Of a stretch of DNA of 64,000 nt, positions 8,901-38,878 are shown piece after piece (the stretch's first letter is position 1; each line of letters begins with the position of its first letter). A program made the translations under genes and the position numbers. The stretch comes from Octopus bimaculoides (lineage: Eukaryota), in the NCBI RefSeq assembly GCF_001194135.2, contig NC_068981.1:11999672-12063671 (forward strand). The letters run 5' to 3'. The notes under the pieces are model-generated. The model worked only from the letters and a program-made list of their open reading frames with translations, did not search any database and was not told where the DNA came from.

Positions 8901-9589
8901 GTGTGCGGCGTCTATTTCTGTCTCTTCCTCTTTATTTGCCTCTTTCTTTACATTCCTCCCTCTCTCGTTCTTCTTCTTTCCCTCGCTGCTATTTTCTGCT
9001 GTTGCTTCTGTCTCCCTCTGGCTTCCACAACTGTTTCTCTCTCCTCCCACTACCACGTAACCCATGACCATCTAAAACCCTCTCATCCTTTTGTTGTTTT
9101 GCCATTACCAGGTCGGTCGCACTTCAAGCATTTTTTTCCTACAAGGCTTGTTTACTTCTTCCTTCATTCTGACTTTCTATCTCCTTCTCTTTCGTCTCTA
9201 GTCCTACTGGACAGTTTCAGTTCCTTTGCCACTCCCACAACTCATCTGTGTGGCAGCGGCACGGCTTTTTTGTTGGTTTAACTTGATTTGATTTGATCTA
9301 GCTTCACGCTAATGAGATGTGACCATATAATTAGTGTAATTACATTTTTCTCTCGTGTTTGTTGTCGTCATTGTCCTGTACGTTCGTTAGATATTCCCGA
9401 ATGGCTTTTCCCACTGGTCCCTCTAAAAGTGAACAATATCAACAATGAAAGGAGCGAGATTGTAAAGATTTTCGGAGATTGACAGAAGAGGCATTAACTA
9501 CGAATTTTCCAGTTGTTAATATCTAATTAAATTTTCCCGTTGCTGTGAAATCTTTAGAATATATACATATATATTCCAACGATGGAGAG

Positions 9590-9890
9590 ATGTAATTAAT
9601 ATTGAGTTCACATTTTGGCGAATGGTCAGGCATTCCGAATACGAGTTAATTCGATTACACCGACCCAGATGCAGAATACTGTTGCTAGACATAGGTCCTC
9701 CACCAGTAACCCTCTTGACCCAGGGCAGCACTACATCCTCCAAGCATTTGATATAGTCATTCATGTTGAGTGTGAGGCTGTGTGGGAAGATGAATGGAGG
9801 CATGACGTCCCCATCACTTGTGATCACTCCAAACTCCATGATGTTGACAGGATGTTTGATTTTTATCACTCTGGGTACATGTCCTCAAAT
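9590..9890 (-). pseudogene. mariner/Tc1-superfamily transposase fragment (catalytic region)
   Basis: VPRVIKIKHPVNIMEFGVITSDGDVMPPFIFPHSLTLNMNDYIKCLEDVVLPWVKRVTGG resembles KTKHP-x-x-MV-G-V-SDG-VMPP...Y...L..VV.PW transposases; decayed downstream. Confidence 0.8.
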
Positions 9891-9939: not shown

Positions 9940-9985
<46 letters not shown>

Positions 9986-10590
9986 ACACACATATATATA
10001 TATGTTCAAAATTCAAATAAGTTATTACTATCTTAAAAAAAAAGAAATAATGATAAATTTTTCAGCTAACATAATCCAAATAGGCAAAATATATATTAAA
10101 AGTCCGGGCACAATATGTATCTGTTTGGAAGAAAGAAGATTTAAAACTCTCCGAAACCATGCATCTCTCGCCATTAGTAAGGTCGCGCGAGAATATAGCA
10201 AATGTAATTAGAAATAGTCTTCCTCTTTATAAAACTACAAATAAGGGAGTAGAAATTCTAGTTTCAACAGTTGCAATGTTTCATAAAAATAAAATGAATT
10301 GCAATTGCTCCTAAAATTCACTAGGGTGTTAAGAAACACTTGCATTGCTAGAAATAAGAGCTATAATTCTCTAATACTGTAGTTAATGCACTCGAATGAA
10401 AACATATACACTACCATATACGTATACATGGGAAGAGATACAAACTAGAATGCTGTAAGGCTGTAGTTAACGCACATGAATTGTTTATATAAATTTTATG
10501 TATCCACATTAGCGAATCACTAAATGATCCATTAATTTCGATGCCGAAAACATATACTAACAGAGAACAGAGAAGCAAGCCGAAGAAAAG

Positions 10591-10661
10591 CGAGATCAAG
10601 TGTGCTTAACTGATGAGGCAACGGAAATAGCCGAAGCTAACGGCTGTATTAAGAAATCCCG
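10591..10661 (+). ncRNA. Type I hammerhead ribozyme motif, array A copy 1 (A15.1 to G variant)
   Basis: Stem I cttaa(10605-09)/ttaag(10649-53); core CTGATGA 10610-16; stem II ggc..gcc; GAAG in place of GAAA at 10633-36; C-G pair then GTA triplet 10646-48; distal stem cgagat/atcccg. Confidence 0.65.
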
Positions 10662-10943
10662 AACAGTATTTTTCAGACAATTCAGATCACTGATAGGGTA
10701 TATATTTTCATTCATGTGCGTTAACTGCAGCATTAGAGTATTTTCGCTCGTAACTCGCGCAATGGAGGTGTTTCTTAACACTCTAGTCACATTTAGTGAC
10801 ACTTGTGTTTCGACTTTTTGGTGAAAAACTGGAACCTGCTGTTTATAGTAATATAATGTATACACATTAGCGAATCCTGAAATCATTCAGTAATTTGGAT
10901 GACGAAAACATATATACTAATAGAGAAGCAAACCGGAGAAAGC

Positions 10944-11010
10944 CGAGGTCGAGCGGGCTTAACTGATGAGGCAAGGGAAATTGTCGAAACGTGAGTACTA
11001 AGAATTCTCG
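10944..11010 (+). ncRNA. Minimal type I hammerhead ribozyme, array A copy 2
   Basis: cttaa CTGATGA ggcaa gggaaa ttgtc GAAAC gtga GTA ctaag: complete conserved core, 5-bp stem II, 2-bp stem III with 4-nt loop, predicted cleavage after A10997. One mismatch at the innermost stem I pair (a10962/c10998); distal stem cgagg/tctcg. Confidence 0.8.
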
Positions 11011-11132
11011 ATCGGCTTTTTTTAACGATTCAGGACCCTGTAAGTGCTTAACAACAATTTTAGCTAGTATTTCTAGCGATGTAGGTGTTTCTACACACCC
11101 TAGTCACATTTAGTGACAATTATATATATACA

Positions 11133-11171
<39 letters not shown>

Positions 11172-11302
11172 GGAGAGAGAGACAGCGAGAGAAAGAGAAG
11201 GAAGGAGAGAAACAGAGAATTTGATGTTAATGCCATATTCATCTGCACATCATATTTCTACCTTTTTCTCAATTTCTAGTGTGTGTGCGTGTGAGTGTGT
11301 GT

Positions 11303-13564: not shown

Positions 13565-13627
13565 GTTGGATGAATGCTGATGAAGTGGAAACAAACACCG
13601 AAATATGGCATATACACTCATTACCAA
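13565..13627 (+). ncRNA. Type I hammerhead ribozyme motif in array B
   Basis: ttggatgaatg CTGATGA a-gtg gaaacaaa cac-c GAAA tat ggc ata T A cactcatt-a-ccaa: core at 13577-83, stem II gtg/cac (A.C at its base), near-palindromic stem III atatg-g-catat, ATA triplet ending at A13614, extended stem I with one mismatch and a bulge. Confidence 0.7.
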
Positions 13628-17700: not shown

Positions 17701-20700
17701 TCATTTTCTTCTGAATGGATATCTTTGGCTTTAGCACTTACATTATTTCTGCTGTTGATATTATTAGTAGTAGAAACATATATTTGAAATTGATCTTTTC
17801 GTTATGCATGTTATCTGGTAGTTACGTTTAAATTACCATGGTCCTGTGTTGTAGCCAATTTCTCAGAATTCAGTTTATCTTGAAGAATGATACACCTAGG
17901 ATATTTTCCTGGTGTTACGTAATTCTCAAAAGATGGTGTTCGATTCCGCAGCGACCAATCTGAGGTACCAAACATTTTACGTAGGCAAGCGTTCTATAAT
18001 TGGAATATTTTTATGATGCAGTTCCGTCAAATACACGCAATACACGTACAAAACCACACATAGCACATGTACACACAAATTGCGTGAATAGAGGAGGTAA
18101 AATTGAGCCTACATAGGTTTCCTAGCTAGCAGAACCTCAGAAGTAGTAATTACGCAATGTCGAATATCCCTTCGTTAAATGAAAGTTACATTGTCGTCCA
18201 GGTGCACCAAGTTAACAAGCAGGAGATTTGATCAAATTATCATATATAGCGACAACAGTTGCTAACCGGCAACTATAAGATAACTTTCTTCAGCTTCTCT
18301 AAGTCACTTATGATAAAAATTTACAGCCTTTCACGCCAATGAACCAATAATGTTCTTGACAGTTTTTTTTTATACCTTCTACGGAATGGTCGCTGTTCAC
18401 CAGCTTCTTACACCTGGGGCCTTGGGTCTTACCTGTACATAATTATATACATACACACACACACACACACACACATATATGTATGTATGTATGCATGTAT
18501 GTATGTATATGGAATATATATGTAGANNNNNNNNNNNNNNNNNNNNNNNNNNNNNNNNNNNNNNNNNNNNNNNNNNNNNNNNNNNNNNNNNNNNNNNNNN
18601 NNNNNNNNNNNNNNNNNNNNNNNNNNNNNNNNNNNNNNNNNNNNNNNNNNNNNNNNNNNNNNNNNNNNNNNNNNNNNNNNNNNNNNNNNNNNNNNNNNNN
18701 NNNNNNNNNNNNNNNNNNNNNNNNNNNNNNNNNNNNNNNNNNNNNNNNNNNNNNNNNNNNNNNNNNNNNNNNNNNNNNNNNTATATATATATATATATAT
18801 ATTTAGACATATGTACTCTTTCTCTTTGCACCAGTTTGATCACGTGAAAAATAAGAACAATCCCATTGCTAGTACACCACTCTTTGCCTCGGCAGCCATA
18901 TTTCGTATGTTCCCCTGGGTCGAGTCTAAGAGGACTTGGGTCTCTATTTAACTAACTGTTCATGATAACATAGAAACAGAAATCTATGAACGAATATACG
19001 GCATATATTAATACATCCTGCTCACTTGTGAGTGACTTGTTAATGTCATATATATAGATGTATATTGCTAGATACGCACATATACAATCATAGATTAACG
19101 AACACATATTCACCCTCACACACACATGTATATACATATACATACGTACATGCATACACATATATACATATATGTATATATAACTGTAAACGTCTCAAAG
19201 ATGCTTACACGCACACACGCGTGCATATATGCATATATATATATATGTGTGTGTGTGTGTGAGTGTGTGTGTGTAGGTATATATATATATATATATATAT
19301 ATGTTGATATTTATATGTCTCATTCCCTGAGACTTTTACCGTTGAAAATCCAATGCGGAAAAATCATTCATTGACCCATTAAAACATGTGAGTAACGATG
19401 CCATTGTCCACCAATTACTATCTAATATCAAATAAATCGAAATTCGTCTCGATATATAGTGAGAGTTTTATTCTTTGCAGAAGGTCAGTAAAATGTCACA
19501 TTCGCTTAATAGTTTAGTCTATAAATCCTGTTAATACATTGCCACGAAATCTTATGCCAGAAATATTAAAGTTAAAGAGAAGAGAATTACTAAACACTGC
19601 AGATATTTAAATAAATGCGCATGGAATTCTTTGATTCCAAATATAGTTTGCTGTGTACATATGTAAGACATTATTTAGTTTAGCCGTGATTAAAGTTAAT
19701 GGTGTGTCGTTTCATTTCGAAATTGTTTTATGCTTCAATGCAAACCAATAAAAAGAAGTGGAACCGTAATCATTACGAACAACCGTTCCCTCCTGATTTA
19801 GAAAAACGATAAGGTCACAATGTCTTTTCATTCAATTTAAGTACATGCAATACCTAATCTCTTGCAAAACGTACATTTTAAGTGTCTTGATATCTACGTA
19901 TTTTGGGTATAGCATTTAATAGCATAATAGAAAATATATAGTTAAATCCCTATGGATATCAGCATCTAGGAAATGATGCATGAGGAAATTAGTATAAAAG
20001 GAGACTGGAAAGAGAGATGAAACTGAAAGTAAACTTCAGAACTAGAAATTCCAAACTCCCAAAATCACATCAACATTTTATTCATTATAAAGGAAAGTGA
20101 GGAATACGATTTATGTTTTATACATTAGAATAACTAAAATGGGTGGAAAGTCGTCTATGAAGGATTACAGAGGGTGAGAATATATATATTATGAAATAAT
20201 GAGATGGTAAGGAAAATACGTCGATTTCTGAAAACACTAAGATATAAACGCCAAGAGGATCGAATGGAGACCTAATGACGTTTCAGAATATAATTGTAGT
20301 AAAACTATTTGTAGCAACTCACCGATTATTGTGGGGGTGAAATGAAATTATCACATGGGGCCACAGGGTGTCTACGATCGAGTAAACCATAATGCAGAAG
20401 GAAACCACTTTCGCGCTTCAAGGCGAATTTCAACAGTTGAACCATTGCTAAATAGGCAGATGTCTGGAATTAGTTTCTCACACTTGGTAACATCCATATT
20501 CTCCTGCGAGACATTCACAACCTGAGAGAAAACAAAATTAGTCGAGGTTGAATCCGTTGACAATTACAAAATAAAGTAAAAACTAGTAATGGATGCGAAC
20601 GAAGAGTGCTAATTAAATTCGGACGCAGATGTGATATTCTCTTATGGCATTCGAAGTAAATTTTAATATCACCCTCATCCCGTTTCCGAGACAAAGTGAC

Positions 20701-38187: not shown

Positions 38188-38878
38188 CTAGTACCTCGTA
38201 CACCTTGGATTTTGCTTTGAGCTTCGACAGACTAAACAGTGTGCCGCCTGATCTGGTGTCGGGGTAAACACCATCAGCTGATGTCCCAAATGCATATTTC
38301 AGCATGACTGCAAAGAATATGCCAAATAGGGTGCGGGCAAGACACAACTCTGTTTCACGCCACTACGTACGTTGAATGCCTCCGAAAAAAAAGTTATTAA
38401 ATAGAACGACTCTTTTGATGTCCGTGTGAAGTGATGGAACCATCCTGAAGAGTCTTGCAGGACAGCTAATCTTGGAGGATAGCTAATCATTGTGAAGTCG
38501 ATGAAGGTGAAACAGAGGGGTTGTCTTAGTTCTCGGCACTTTTCCTCTGGCAATTGGAGAGAGATCATAACGACGGTGTAGCGTTTTGCTCTGAAACGAC
38601 ACCGAGATTCGGGGTATACCCCATCAGCGATTTTCTGTAGCCTATGAAGAGCCACGGTGGCAAAGACTTTCCCAACGATGCTTGACAGCAAAATACGTCG
38701 GTAGTTATTGCAGTCGATTTTGTCTCCTTCGTTCTCATATAGGGTGTCACTGCTGTAGTAGTCTCTCATGTCTTGCGGTACTGCTCCCTCCTCCCACCAC
38801 TGATACAGTAGCTTCAGCATTAGGCTAAGTAGAAATCTCCTTACGCATCTGATGATCTCTGGTGGGATACCATCCAAA
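38188..38878 (-). mobile_element. RTE-clade LINE, inverted 5' RT segment
   Basis: LDGIPPEII...WEEGAVPQDMRD...GDKIDCNNYRRILLSSIVGKVFA...YPESRCRFR...FIDFT...SGVKQSCVL / PTLFGIFFAVMLKYAFG...LKAKSKVYEVL; frameshifted. Confidence 0.92.

What the first reader, a model, noticed from the sequence alone, without database searches (positions are those of the whole stretch)
10311..11118. Retrozyme-like tandem repeat: two units of about 350 bp, each carrying a type I hammerhead ribozyme
Seen: two diverged tandem units each contain stem I-CUGAUGA-stem II-GAA(A/G)C-short stem III-GUA-stem I' at the same position (cores at 10610 and 10963). The surrounding sequence has drifted, but pairing is mostly kept (stem II ggc/gcc versus ggcaa/ttgtc; distal stem I cgagat/atcccg versus cgagg/tctcg). 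Cleavage at both sites would release a 349-nt monomer (10649-10997). Established: minimal type I hammerheads with a tiny stem III occur in Penelope-like element termini and in non-autonomous tandem retrozymes of a few hundred nt that yield circular RNAs. Inference: this is a member of such a family, which I do not recognise as described; these two copies may be partly inactive (A15.1G in copy 1, innermost stem I mismatch in copy 2).
Basis: partly seen in the sequence, partly recalled or inferred. Interest (0 to 1): 0.82.

Follow-up and report, generated by a model that had tools for sequence, protein, structure and literature searches.

The report
Decayed hammerhead-ribozyme retrozyme repeat
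This is an old, mutated two-unit copy of a small mobile repeat that carries a self-cutting hammerhead RNA motif, a kind of element already well known in animal genomes, so it is a real but fairly ordinary feature.

Summary
Two head-to-tail units of about 355 bp (10482-10839 and 10840-11121, about 78-80% identical) each carry a type I hammerhead-like motif. The CUGAUGA boxes are at 10610 and 10963, and the predicted cleavage sites are 349 nt apart.

A covariance model built only from four published, experimentally cleaving retrozyme hammerheads picks these two sites as the top hits in the whole 64-kb window (19.8 and 17.7 bits; rough E 0.002 and 0.01). No Rfam model reaches its gathering score.

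Copy 2 has the full CUGANGA/GAAAY/RUH core, and helices I and II fold with probability 0.86 or higher. Copy 1 looks dead. A 4-nt indel turns GAAAC into GAAGC and creates a competing hairpin.

It is an inverted, 5'-truncated partial copy. Together with the partial tandem and the abutting (TA)n microsatellite, this is the published insertion signature of Penelope-like elements.

The hammerhead is no better conserved than its flanks, the monomer is not unusually structured, and no other copy was found in the window or in the searchable collections.

Verdict: a decayed non-LTR retrozyme or Penelope-derived non-autonomous element, a new member of a known kind. Interest is low to moderate.

The parts
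10265..10416 (-). Inverted, 5'-truncated partial unit. It is the reverse complement of the 3' part of the repeat unit. The core match is 10303-10416. The outer 38 nt match only weakly.
   Evidence: the repeat finder I1: 10302-10416 vs 10691-10805, 115 nt, 77% complementary. I2: 10303-10368 vs 11056-11121, 79%. Local alignment extends to 10265 vs 10841. The extension alone scores 15 against a shuffle mean of 11.6 and a shuffle maximum of 20, which is not significant. Multiple alignment A2.
10427..10481 (-). Second, inner inverted fragment of the same part of the unit. It also reads as an 84-nt-offset internal duplication of 10343-10397.
   Evidence: I18: 10435-10481 vs 10710-10756, 81% complementary. 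D8: 10343-10397 vs 10427-10481, 73%. Also.
10482..10839 (+). Repeat unit 1, full length, about 358 bp.
   Evidence: Direct-repeat families D4-D6 and D10. blastn E 6e-42. Alignment A1.
10590..10661 (+). Hammerhead copy 1, defective.
- Distal stem I 10591-10596/10656-10661.
- Proximal stem I 10605-10609/10649-10653.
- CUGAUGA 10610-10616.
- Stem II 10617-10619/10630-10632.
- GAAG 10633-10636.
- GUA 10646-10648, nominal cleavage after A10648.
- Competing hairpin 10628-10633/10641-10646.
   Evidence: Sequence. 4-nt indel relative to copy 2. Model R1 17.7 bits, rough E 0.0098. Hammerhead helices p about 0 and alternative hairpin p>=0.95.
10840..11121 (+). Repeat unit 2. It has 31 nt of internal deletions and lacks the last 35 nt or so of the unit, where the (TA)n run begins.
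   Evidence: Alignments A1 and A2.
10944..11012 (+). Hammerhead copy 2, core intact.
- Distal stem I 10948-10953/11007-11012.
- 4x4 internal loop.
- Proximal stem I 10958-10961/10999-11002, with an A10962/C10998 mismatch.
- CUGAUGA 10963-10969.
- Stem II 10970-10974/10981-10985 (5 bp, one G-U), loop GGGAAA.
- GAAA 10986-10989.
- Helix III A10989-U10996 and C10990-G10995 with a GUGA tetraloop.
- Predicted cleavage after A10997.
   Evidence: Sequence. Only strict descriptor hit in the window. Model R1 19.8 bits, rough E 0.0023, top hit of the window. Base-pair probabilities of 0.86-1.0 for helices I and II even in the 640-nt transcript. Rfam Hammerhead_3 18.7 bits, below the gathering score of 48.5.
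10786..10800 (+). Small conserved hairpin GTCAC-ATTTA-GTGAC near the 3' end of the unit. It is repeated at 11103-11117 and is degenerate in the inverted copy.
11121..11168 (.). (TA)24 microsatellite abutting the right end of the array, followed by GA-rich repeats. A (CA)25 run lies upstream at 9943-9992.
   Evidence: Tandem Repeats Finder.

Best explanation
The locus is one old insertion of a short non-coding retroelement. It is a metazoan 'non-LTR retrozyme', or equivalently a non-autonomous derivative of the pseudo-LTR of a Penelope-like element (PLE). Each unit of about 355 bp encodes one canonical type I hammerhead ribozyme.

How such elements work, from the literature and not shown here:
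1. A multimeric transcript of the tandem units self-cleaves at each hammerhead, here after the GUA triplets.
2. The unit-length RNA, about 349 nt here, carries 5'-OH and 2',3'-cyclic phosphate ends. An RtcB-type tRNA ligase circularises it.
3. The circle is copied by the reverse transcriptase of an autonomous PLE into multimeric cDNA.
4. The PLE endonuclease integrates the cDNA, preferentially at microsatellites. This leaves partial tandems and often an inverted 5'-truncated copy at the upstream end.

Shown here: the tandem units, a hammerhead motif in each unit, the inverted truncated copy, the abutting microsatellite, and the absence of coding capacity.

Inferred here: all copies arose in one event and then decayed neutrally, since they differ pairwise by about 20-29%. 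Copy 1's ribozyme is inactivated by a 4-nt indel that creates a competing hairpin. Copy 2 keeps a complete core and a foldable scaffold and might still cleave weakly. With only one plausible active site, this locus by itself can no longer release a unit-length circle. It is a relic, not a working copy.
For: 1. Tandem units.
2. Hammerhead anatomy in both units at homologous positions. A strict descriptor hits only 10963 and is expected 0.007 times per window.
3. Independent test: model R1, built only from the coral, mussel and two axolotl retrozyme hammerheads (supplementary Table 2 of PMC7229834), ranks 10957-11003 (19.8 bits, E 0.0023) and 10604-10654 (17.7 bits, E 0.0098) first and second in 128 kb of searched strand. 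The next hit has 11.9 bits and E 0.49.
4. Copy 2 satisfies the CUGANGA/GAAAY/RUH filter of the field. It has the 2-bp-plus-tetraloop helix III described for invertebrate retrozyme hammerheads. This matches the 'canonical metazoan type I' layout in PMC4209133.
5. Helices I and II of copy 2 have pairing probabilities of 0.86-1.0 in every transcript context tested.
6. Unit size of 349-358 bp and GC of 38% fit the published range of 170-400 nt and GC below 50%.
7. The inverted 5'-truncated copy at the upstream end, the partial tandem and the microsatellite at the end match the PLE insertion architecture described in PMC8557442.
8. The three copies of the 3' part of the unit are about equidistant at 71-75%. 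This fits a single origin.
9. A 2026 preprint derives retrozymes from PLE pseudo-LTRs.
Against: - No Rfam hammerhead model reaches its gathering score. There was nothing in the whole window. The best local scores were 18.7 bits against a threshold of 48.5 and 13.5 against 56.3.
- Only two non-independent copies exist, so there is no covariation evidence.
- The hammerhead is not more conserved than its flanks.
- The circular 349-nt monomer is not more stable than shuffled sequence (z = -0.68, 62% paired). Published retrozyme circles are described as highly self-paired.
- No further copy was found in the 64-kb window, in metagenome or viral contigs, or among spurious ORFs in the protein libraries.
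- No PLE reverse transcriptase or GIY-YIG remnant was seen nearby.
- No target-site duplication was found.
- The E-values of model R1 are rough by design.
- Across a whole genome scan, some descriptor hits are expected by chance, about 120 per Gb for my strict descriptor.
Confidence: 0.72

Rival explanations
1. The locus is a remnant of an autonomous Penelope-like element rather than of a dedicated non-autonomous family. The units would be pseudo-LTR copies left after deletion of the internal RT/GIY-YIG ORF, or after extreme 5' truncation of it.
For: PLE pseudo-LTRs carry hammerheads. PLE insertions are heavily 5'-truncated and are organised as partial tandems with an inverted truncated copy and a microsatellite bias (PMC8557442; PMC4209133). 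The locus shows exactly this layout.
Against: The hammerhead here is of the canonical type: helix II of 5 bp, helix III of 2 bp plus a tetraloop, and helix I with an internal loop. It is not the 'min-HHR' typical of metazoan PLE pseudo-LTRs, which has no helix III, a helix II of 7-8 bp and a short helix I. The two ribozymes are 349 nt apart with no trace of an ORF between them. No RT or GIY-YIG signal was detected near the locus. If retrozymes are PLE derivatives, this rival differs from the best explanation only in degree.
Confidence: 0.14
2. The hammerhead-like motif is a chance match in an unrelated local duplication. The candidates are a short satellite, a segmental duplication with an inversion, or a foldback/MITE-like DNA element with terminal inverted repeats. 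No ribozyme or RNA intermediate would be involved.
For: - The composite has terminal inverted repeats, 10303-10368 vs 11056-11121 at 79%.
- The two motifs share ancestry, so they count as one observation.
- The motif is not conserved above background.
- There are no Rfam hits at curated thresholds.
- No other copies were found.
- The monomer fold is unremarkable.
- Chance descriptor hits are expected at roughly 120 per Gb.
Against: - The joint occurrence has a low chance probability. It combines a complete core, a 5-bp helix II closed by G-C, a two-part helix I and a GNRA-capped helix III. All of this sits inside a tandem unit of the size typical of retrozymes.
- The chance rate is 0.007 per window for the descriptor and a rough E of 0.002 for the independent model. 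The tandem array occupies only about 1% of the window.
- For each variable hammerhead position, at least one copy keeps the canonical state.
- No target-site duplication flanks the terminal inverted repeats.
- The inverted arm is a copy of the unit's 3' part, as in PLE insertions. It is not a separate terminal sequence.
Confidence: 0.1
3. The locus is still functional. Read-through transcription would yield either a self-cleaved RNA from copy 2, or a long imperfect hairpin RNA (10302-10416 pairing with 10691-10805) that feeds small-RNA pathways.
For: Copy 2's core is intact and its scaffold folds. There is a 115-nt inverted repeat at 77% complementarity.
Against: All segments have diverged at a similar, apparently neutral rate. 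Copy 1 is misfolded. No expression data are available, and no promoter evidence could be obtained.
Confidence: 0.04

Closest known systems
Metazoan non-LTR retrozymes (Cervera and de la Pena 2020, PMC7229834), for example the Mytilus galloprovincialis 350-390-bp repeats (Mg353) and the axolotl Rtz353
   Same: - Head-to-tail repeats of a few hundred bp (349-358 here), AT-rich and non-coding.
- One type I hammerhead per unit.
- Helix III of 2 bp plus a tetraloop: GAAAC-NNNN-GUH in Mg353, Ax353 and here.
- Short arrays (dimers) are common.
   Different: - There is no sequence similarity outside the ribozyme core to Mg353, Ax353 or coral Amil224.
- The tetraloop GUGA is not palindromic.
- The predicted circle is not unusually self-paired.
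- One of the two ribozymes is broken.
- Genome-wide copy number and circular RNA are unknown.
Penelope-like elements and their pseudo-LTR hammerheads (PMC4209133; PMC8557442)
   Same: The insertion architecture matches: a partial tandem, an inverted 5'-truncated copy at the upstream end that forms flanking inverted repeats, and an association with a microsatellite. A hammerhead lies in each repeated unit.
   Different: There is no RT/GIY-YIG ORF. The ribozyme is the canonical type with a helix III, not the minimal PLE type.
Hammerhead-bearing 'satellite' repeats: newt satellite 2 (about 330 bp) and Schistosoma Sm-alpha, now regarded as retrozymes (PMC7229834)
   Same: The unit length is about 330-350 bp, with a type I hammerhead and a very short helix III.
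   Different: Those occur in long arrays or in thousands of dispersed copies, and transcripts are documented. Here only 1.8 direct units plus an inverted fragment are visible, and they are decayed.
Plant LTR retrozymes (PMC4918200)
   Same: Both are non-autonomous retroelements that use hammerheads to make circular RNA intermediates.
   Different: The plant elements have type III hammerheads inside LTRs, a PBS and PPT, and 600-1000-nt circles. None of these is present here.

Membership tests
Hammerhead ribozyme, type I | Conserved catalytic core: C3-U4-G5-A6-N7-G8-A9, G12-A13-A14, the A15.1-U16.1 pair, and H17 at the cleavage site (CUGANGA / GAAAY / RUH) | tested here: met
   Copy 2 has CUGAUGA at 10963-69, GAAAC at 10986-90 and GUA at 10995-97. 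Copy 1 fails: it reads GAAGC because of a 4-nt indel.
Hammerhead ribozyme, type I | Three helices around the core, with helix I open (both ends of the RNA in helix I) | tested here: met
   In copy 2, helix I (4 bp, a 4x4 loop, then 6 bp) and helix II (5 bp) have pairing probabilities of 0.86-1.0. Helix III is A-U and C-G plus a GUGA loop, which is too short to be predicted thermodynamically. In copy 1 the helices have p about 0, displaced by the hairpin 10628-33/10641-46.
Hammerhead ribozyme, type I | Score at or above the curated Rfam gathering threshold (clan CL00010 models) | tested here: not met
   There was no match in the window at gathering thresholds. The best sub-threshold matches were Hammerhead_3 at 18.7 against 48.5 bits and RAGATH-1-hammerhead at 13.5 against 56.3 bits.
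Hammerhead ribozyme, type I | Recognition by a model built from experimentally cleaving retrozyme hammerheads | tested here: met
   Model R1 (4 published sequences) scores the two sites as the top hits of the window: 19.8 bits with E 0.0023, and 17.7 bits with E 0.0098. The E-values are rough.
Hammerhead ribozyme, type I | Covariation or conservation of the helices across copies | tested here: inconclusive
   Only two related copies exist. The differences are mismatches and wobbles with no double compensatory change. Identity is 80-84% in the ribozyme and 75-80% in the flanks.
Hammerhead ribozyme, type I | Site-specific self-cleavage | not testable with these tools
   This needs in vitro transcription.
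Metazoan non-LTR retrozyme | Head-to-tail repeats of about 150-450 bp, each with one type I hammerhead | tested here: met
   There are two units with a spacing of 353-358 bp and 349 nt between cleavage sites. Only about 1.8 units are present.
Metazoan non-LTR retrozyme | GC content below 50%, with no LTR/PBS/PPT and no coding capacity | tested here: met
   GC is 38%. ORFs are 96 aa or shorter and have no Pfam family.
Metazoan non-LTR retrozyme | Many copies dispersed in the genome, as a family with a consensus | not testable with these tools
   The source genome is not available. There is no other copy in the 64-kb window. Motif scans of metagenome and viral contigs gave chance hits only. The only protein-library hit was a chance match in a bacterial genome.
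Metazoan non-LTR retrozyme | Unit-length RNA predicted to be a highly self-paired circle | tested here: not met
   The circular MFE is -75.2 kcal/mol, against -71.5 +/- 5.5 for shuffles, giving z = -0.68 with 62% of bases paired. This may reflect the decay of these particular copies.
Metazoan non-LTR retrozyme | Expression as linear and circular RNA of unit length | not testable with these tools
   No transcript data are available.
Penelope-like element (autonomous) | An ORF encoding a telomerase-like RT plus a GIY-YIG endonuclease between the repeats | tested here: not met
   There are 349 nt between the ribozymes and no such ORF in 7-15 kb. The only RT-like ORFs in the window are LINE-type fragments at 38.3-39.6 kb.
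Penelope-like element (insertion signature) | A partial tandem (pseudo-LTR), an inverted 5'-truncated copy at the upstream end, and a microsatellite target | tested here: met
   The definition is from PMC8557442.
Foldback / MITE-like DNA transposon | Terminal inverted repeats flanked by a target-site duplication | tested here: not met
   Inverted termini are present (66 nt, 79%). The flanks do not score above shuffled sequence (scores of 14-16 against shuffle means of about 17). The arms are copies of the internal unit.

The most novel reading that the evidence does not exclude
The unit belongs to a lineage-specific retrozyme family that has not been catalogued and that is still active elsewhere in this genome. 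On that reading, this decayed copy preserves a full Penelope-type insertion signature for an ORF-less hammerhead repeat: an inverted 5'-truncated copy, a tandem and a microsatellite. It would be direct structural evidence, from an invertebrate, that retrozymes are integrated by the PLE RT/GIY-YIG machinery. So far this has been argued mainly from co-occurrence and from pseudo-LTR phylogeny in vertebrates.
Probability: 0.35. Interest if true: 0.45.

Novelty: new member of a known kind. Interest (0 to 1): 0.27.

Why it matters
If confirmed genome-wide, the locus adds one more species-specific family to the catalogue of animal hammerhead retrozymes. These are abundant sources of small circular RNAs whose function is unknown. 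Its one modestly useful aspect is the architecture. An ORF-less hammerhead repeat laid down with the inverted-plus-tandem, microsatellite-associated pattern of Penelope-like elements supports the view that these elements mobilise retrozymes. As a single decayed locus it opens no new question and does not change what is known.

Tried and rejected
1. Rfam. The whole window at gathering thresholds gave nothing. Permissive searches of the region and of each copy gave only sub-threshold matches (Hammerhead_3, RAGATH-1-hammerhead), plus microsatellite-driven miRNA noise.

2. Type III reading of copy 2, proposed by the Rfam alignment. Rejected, because stems I and III in that reading are mostly mismatched.

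3. Alternative reading of copy 1, with a 7-bp helix III and almost no helix II. Rejected as a ribozyme. It is the competing hairpin that inactivates copy 1.

4. Search for more copies:
- blastn within the window found none.
- An exact-motif scan of metagenome contigs (112 stretches) and of viral contigs (1 stretch) gave only chance matches, mostly inside prokaryote-like sequence.
- I searched with the spurious 96-aa ORF that spans the repeat. The search for homologous proteins timed out twice.
- The exhaustive representative search gave one hit, P0041. It is a tandem-repeat ORF on a contig whose neighbouring genes are bacterial in type (TonB-dependent receptor, OMP decarboxylase). It has no hammerhead, and its score is inflated by five near-identical repeats. 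Rejected.

5. Identifying the organism:
- The LINE RT fragment gave only 43-62% identical hits from turtle, amphipod, sea slug and coral.
- Exact-protein look-ups were not on record.
- There are no tRNA genes.
- Pfam found nothing above threshold.
- The organism remains unknown. It is an AT-rich, microsatellite-dense draft eukaryote.

6. Homology to published retrozyme units (Mg353, Ax353, Amil224). There is none outside the ribozyme core.

7. Full-text searches for the motif string gave nothing relevant.

8. Target-site duplication. None was found. Similarity between 10416-10442 and the right flank 11158-11184 (score 29 against 15.3 +/- 2.5) is probably a low-complexity TA/GA effect, and part of it is unit-derived.

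9. The bacterial promoter/terminator scan is not applicable to a eukaryote.

10. Other CUGAUGA...GAAA matches at 13577, 17745 and 54518 are chance, with wrong cores or no helices.
Full report
**What is there**

The window is a draft eukaryotic sequence. It is about 33% GC, has dense (TA)n, (CA)n and (GA)n microsatellites and N gaps, and carries degenerate LINE and DNA-transposon fragments.

Between 10482 and 11121 there are two head-to-tail copies of a unit of about 355 bp:
- Direct-repeat blocks of 70-78 nt are 77-83% identical at spacings of 358, 353 and 317 nt.
- blastn gives E 6e-42.
- The MAFFT alignment has 80% mean column identity. Unit 2 carries 31 nt of internal deletions and ends at a (TA)24 run.
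- Tandem Repeats Finder does not report the period, because there are fewer than two full, indel-free copies.

- 10303-10416 is the reverse complement of 10691-10805 (115 nt, 77%).
- Weak similarity continues out to 10265, which corresponds to the unit boundary at 10841.
- 10435-10481 is a second inverted fragment, the reverse complement of 10710-10756 at 81%.

The composite therefore reads: inverted 3'-part of a unit, then a full unit, then a truncated unit, then a microsatellite. It has 66-nt inverted termini.

**The hammerhead motifs**

Copy 2 reads as follows:
- proximal stem I 10958-10961/10999-11002
- CUGAUGA 10963-10969
- stem II GGCAA/UUGUC, 10970-10974/10981-10985, with loop GGGAAA
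- GAAA 10986-10989
- helix III A-U and C-G capped by GUGA
- U10996 and A10997, with cleavage predicted after 10997

Every invariant core nucleotide is present. The motif passes the CUGANGA/GAAAY/RUH filter used in the field (supplement of PMC7229834). Its only blemish is the A10962/C10998 mismatch at the base of helix I.

Copy 1 has the same CUGAUGA (10610-10616), stem II (3 bp plus an A/A mismatch) and a perfect proximal stem I. The alignment shows a 4-nt indel (AGCU) that converts GAAAC into GAAGC and lengthens loop III.

**Is it more than chance?**

- A strict descriptor requires the core, a stem II of at least 3 bp closed by G-C, one extra helix III pair, and at least 4 of 5 stem I pairs. 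It hits only 10963 in both strands of the window. In 57 Mb of first-order Markov sequence it occurs 7 times. That is 0.007 per window, or roughly 120 per Gb.
- I built a covariance model, R1, from the four hammerheads of the published, experimentally cleaving retrozyme constructs: coral Amil224, mussel Mg353, and axolotl Ax353 and Ax330. Searched over the whole window, its two best hits are exactly the two sites: 19.8 bits with E 0.0023, and 17.7 bits with E 0.0098. The E-values are rough. The third hit, at 17745, has 11.9 bits and E 0.49.
- Rfam's curated models give nothing at gathering thresholds. Locally they give only weak matches. So formal Rfam membership is not met.
- The two motifs share ancestry, so they are one observation, not two.
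- The location matters more. The motif sits inside a tandem unit of exactly the size class of known retrozymes, and that array occupies only about 1% of the window.

**Folding**

In copy 2, helices I and II have base-pair probabilities of 0.86-1.0, whether folded alone, within unit 2, or within the 640-nt two-unit transcript. The favoured distal helix I is 10948-10953/11007-11012, separated from the proximal part by a 4x4 internal loop.

In copy 1, the hammerhead helices have probability near zero. The indel creates a 6-7-bp hairpin (10628-10633/10641-10646) that sequesters the 3' strand of stem II and the GAA box with p>=0.95. Copy 1 is therefore most likely dead. Copy 2 is structurally competent on paper.

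The 349-nt circle is not more stable than shuffled sequence (z = -0.68 for the plus strand and -0.59 for the minus strand). Published retrozyme circles are described as highly self-paired.

**Conservation**

Between the two units, identity is 80-84% in the ribozyme, 80% upstream and 75% downstream. All differences in the helices are mismatches or wobbles. There is no compensatory double change. With two copies there is no evidence of selection on the ribozyme at this locus.

The three copies of the unit's 3' part (unit 1, unit 2 and the inverted copy) are about equidistant at 71-75%. This fits one origin followed by neutral decay.

**Comparison with what is known**

Cervera and de la Pena (PMC7229834) describe the family:
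- Most animal type I hammerheads lie in tandem repeats of about 150-450 bp, called non-LTR retrozymes.
- They are AT-rich and non-coding, with species-specific sequences.
- They are expressed as 170-400-nt linear and circular RNAs in cnidarians, mussels (350-390-bp units), crustaceans, insects, flatworms and amphibians.
- Invertebrate ribozymes typically have a 2-bp helix III with a tetraloop.

PMC4209133 defines the canonical metazoan type I layout: helix I about 6 bp, helix II about 4 bp, helix III 1-2 bp with a 2-4-nt loop. It contrasts this with the minimal hammerheads of Penelope-like element pseudo-LTRs. The motif here is of the canonical type.

PMC8557442 describes the insertion signature of Penelope-like elements: 5' truncation, partial tandems, often an inverted 5'-truncated copy at the upstream end that makes flanking inverted repeats, and a bias for microsatellites. 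The locus shows all of these.

[quoted passage not shown] It also notes that dimers and short arrays are common.

The unit has no similarity to the published mussel, axolotl or coral units outside the ribozyme core.

**Interpretation**

The best explanation (confidence about 0.72) is a single, old insertion of a non-LTR retrozyme or PLE-derived non-autonomous element, now a neutral relic with one broken and one nominally intact hammerhead. The life cycle is taken from the literature and is not shown here. It runs from multimeric transcript to hammerhead cleavage, then RtcB-type ligation to a circle, then PLE-mediated reverse transcription and integration.

The rivals are:
- a remnant of an autonomous PLE (0.14)
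- a chance motif in an unrelated duplication or foldback element (0.10)
- a still-functional locus (0.04)

**Limits**

The decisive test is the copy number and consensus of the unit in the source genome. It could not be run. The organism could not be identified, and the searchable DNA and protein collections yielded only chance matches. Two protein searches timed out.

**Verdict**

It is imprecise in its boundaries, and the inverted copy was missed. Its novelty is overstated. It is a new member of a known kind, decayed, of low to moderate interest.

Noticed in passing
window 10302-10416 vs 10691-10805: The inverted partial copy and unit 1 form a 115-nt, 77%-complementary inverted repeat with hammerhead copy 1 in the 274-nt spacer. 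A read-through transcript could fold into a long imperfect hairpin.
   Followed up: partly
window 10416-10442 vs 11158-11184: ATATACGTATACATGGGAAGAGATACA resembles the sequence just beyond the right-hand (TA)n run, ATATATATATACATGGAGAGAGAGACA. The score is 29 against 15.3 +/- 2.5 for shuffles. This could be a low-complexity coincidence or a trace of the target site. Part of it aligns with unit-derived sequence.
   Followed up: partly
window 38299-38961 (-) and 38833-39601 (+): There are two degenerate LINE-type reverse-transcriptase fragments in opposite orientation. The minus-strand ORF has 43-62% identical relatives in turtle, amphipod, sea slug and coral (RVT_1 family), but itself falls below Pfam thresholds.
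   Followed up: partly
window 9519-9884 (-), 45810-46142 (+), 53446-54333 (-): These ORF fragments look like remnants of DNA transposases. By eye, one has a Tc1/mariner-like C-terminal motif just upstream of the finding. The others give weak HTH_Tnp_Tc3_2 (E 0.003) and weak DDE_1 (E 0.15) matches. None reaches the Pfam cut-offs.
   Followed up: partly
window 13577-13603, 17745-17790, 54518-54595: These are other CUGA(N)GA...GAAA-type matches. 13577 lacks a proper stem II. 17745 has CUGUUGA (11.9 bits, E 0.49 with model R1). 54518 passes only a relaxed descriptor. All were judged to be chance.
   Followed up: yes
whole window, e.g. 16.7-17.2 kb, 20.9-21.7 kb, 29.2-29.6 kb, 46.4-47.0 kb, 52.9-53.4 kb, 57.1-57.5 kb: 3,681 N bases lie in several assembly gaps. 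Almost all gaps are bounded by (TA)n or (TATG/CA)n microsatellites, so microsatellite density probably limited the assembly. Tandem and inverted structures like the one studied are also prone to misassembly.
   Followed up: no
locus L114 3001-4080 (NCBI assembly GCA_013294025.1, contig JABSNL010000002.1): A 359-aa ORF is made of five near-identical repeats of about 72 aa, a DNA tandem repeat of about 216 nt. It sits between a TonB-dependent receptor gene and a periplasmic-binding-protein gene on a bacterial-type contig. It surfaced only as a chance protein match, and model R1 finds no hammerhead in it.
   Followed up: partly
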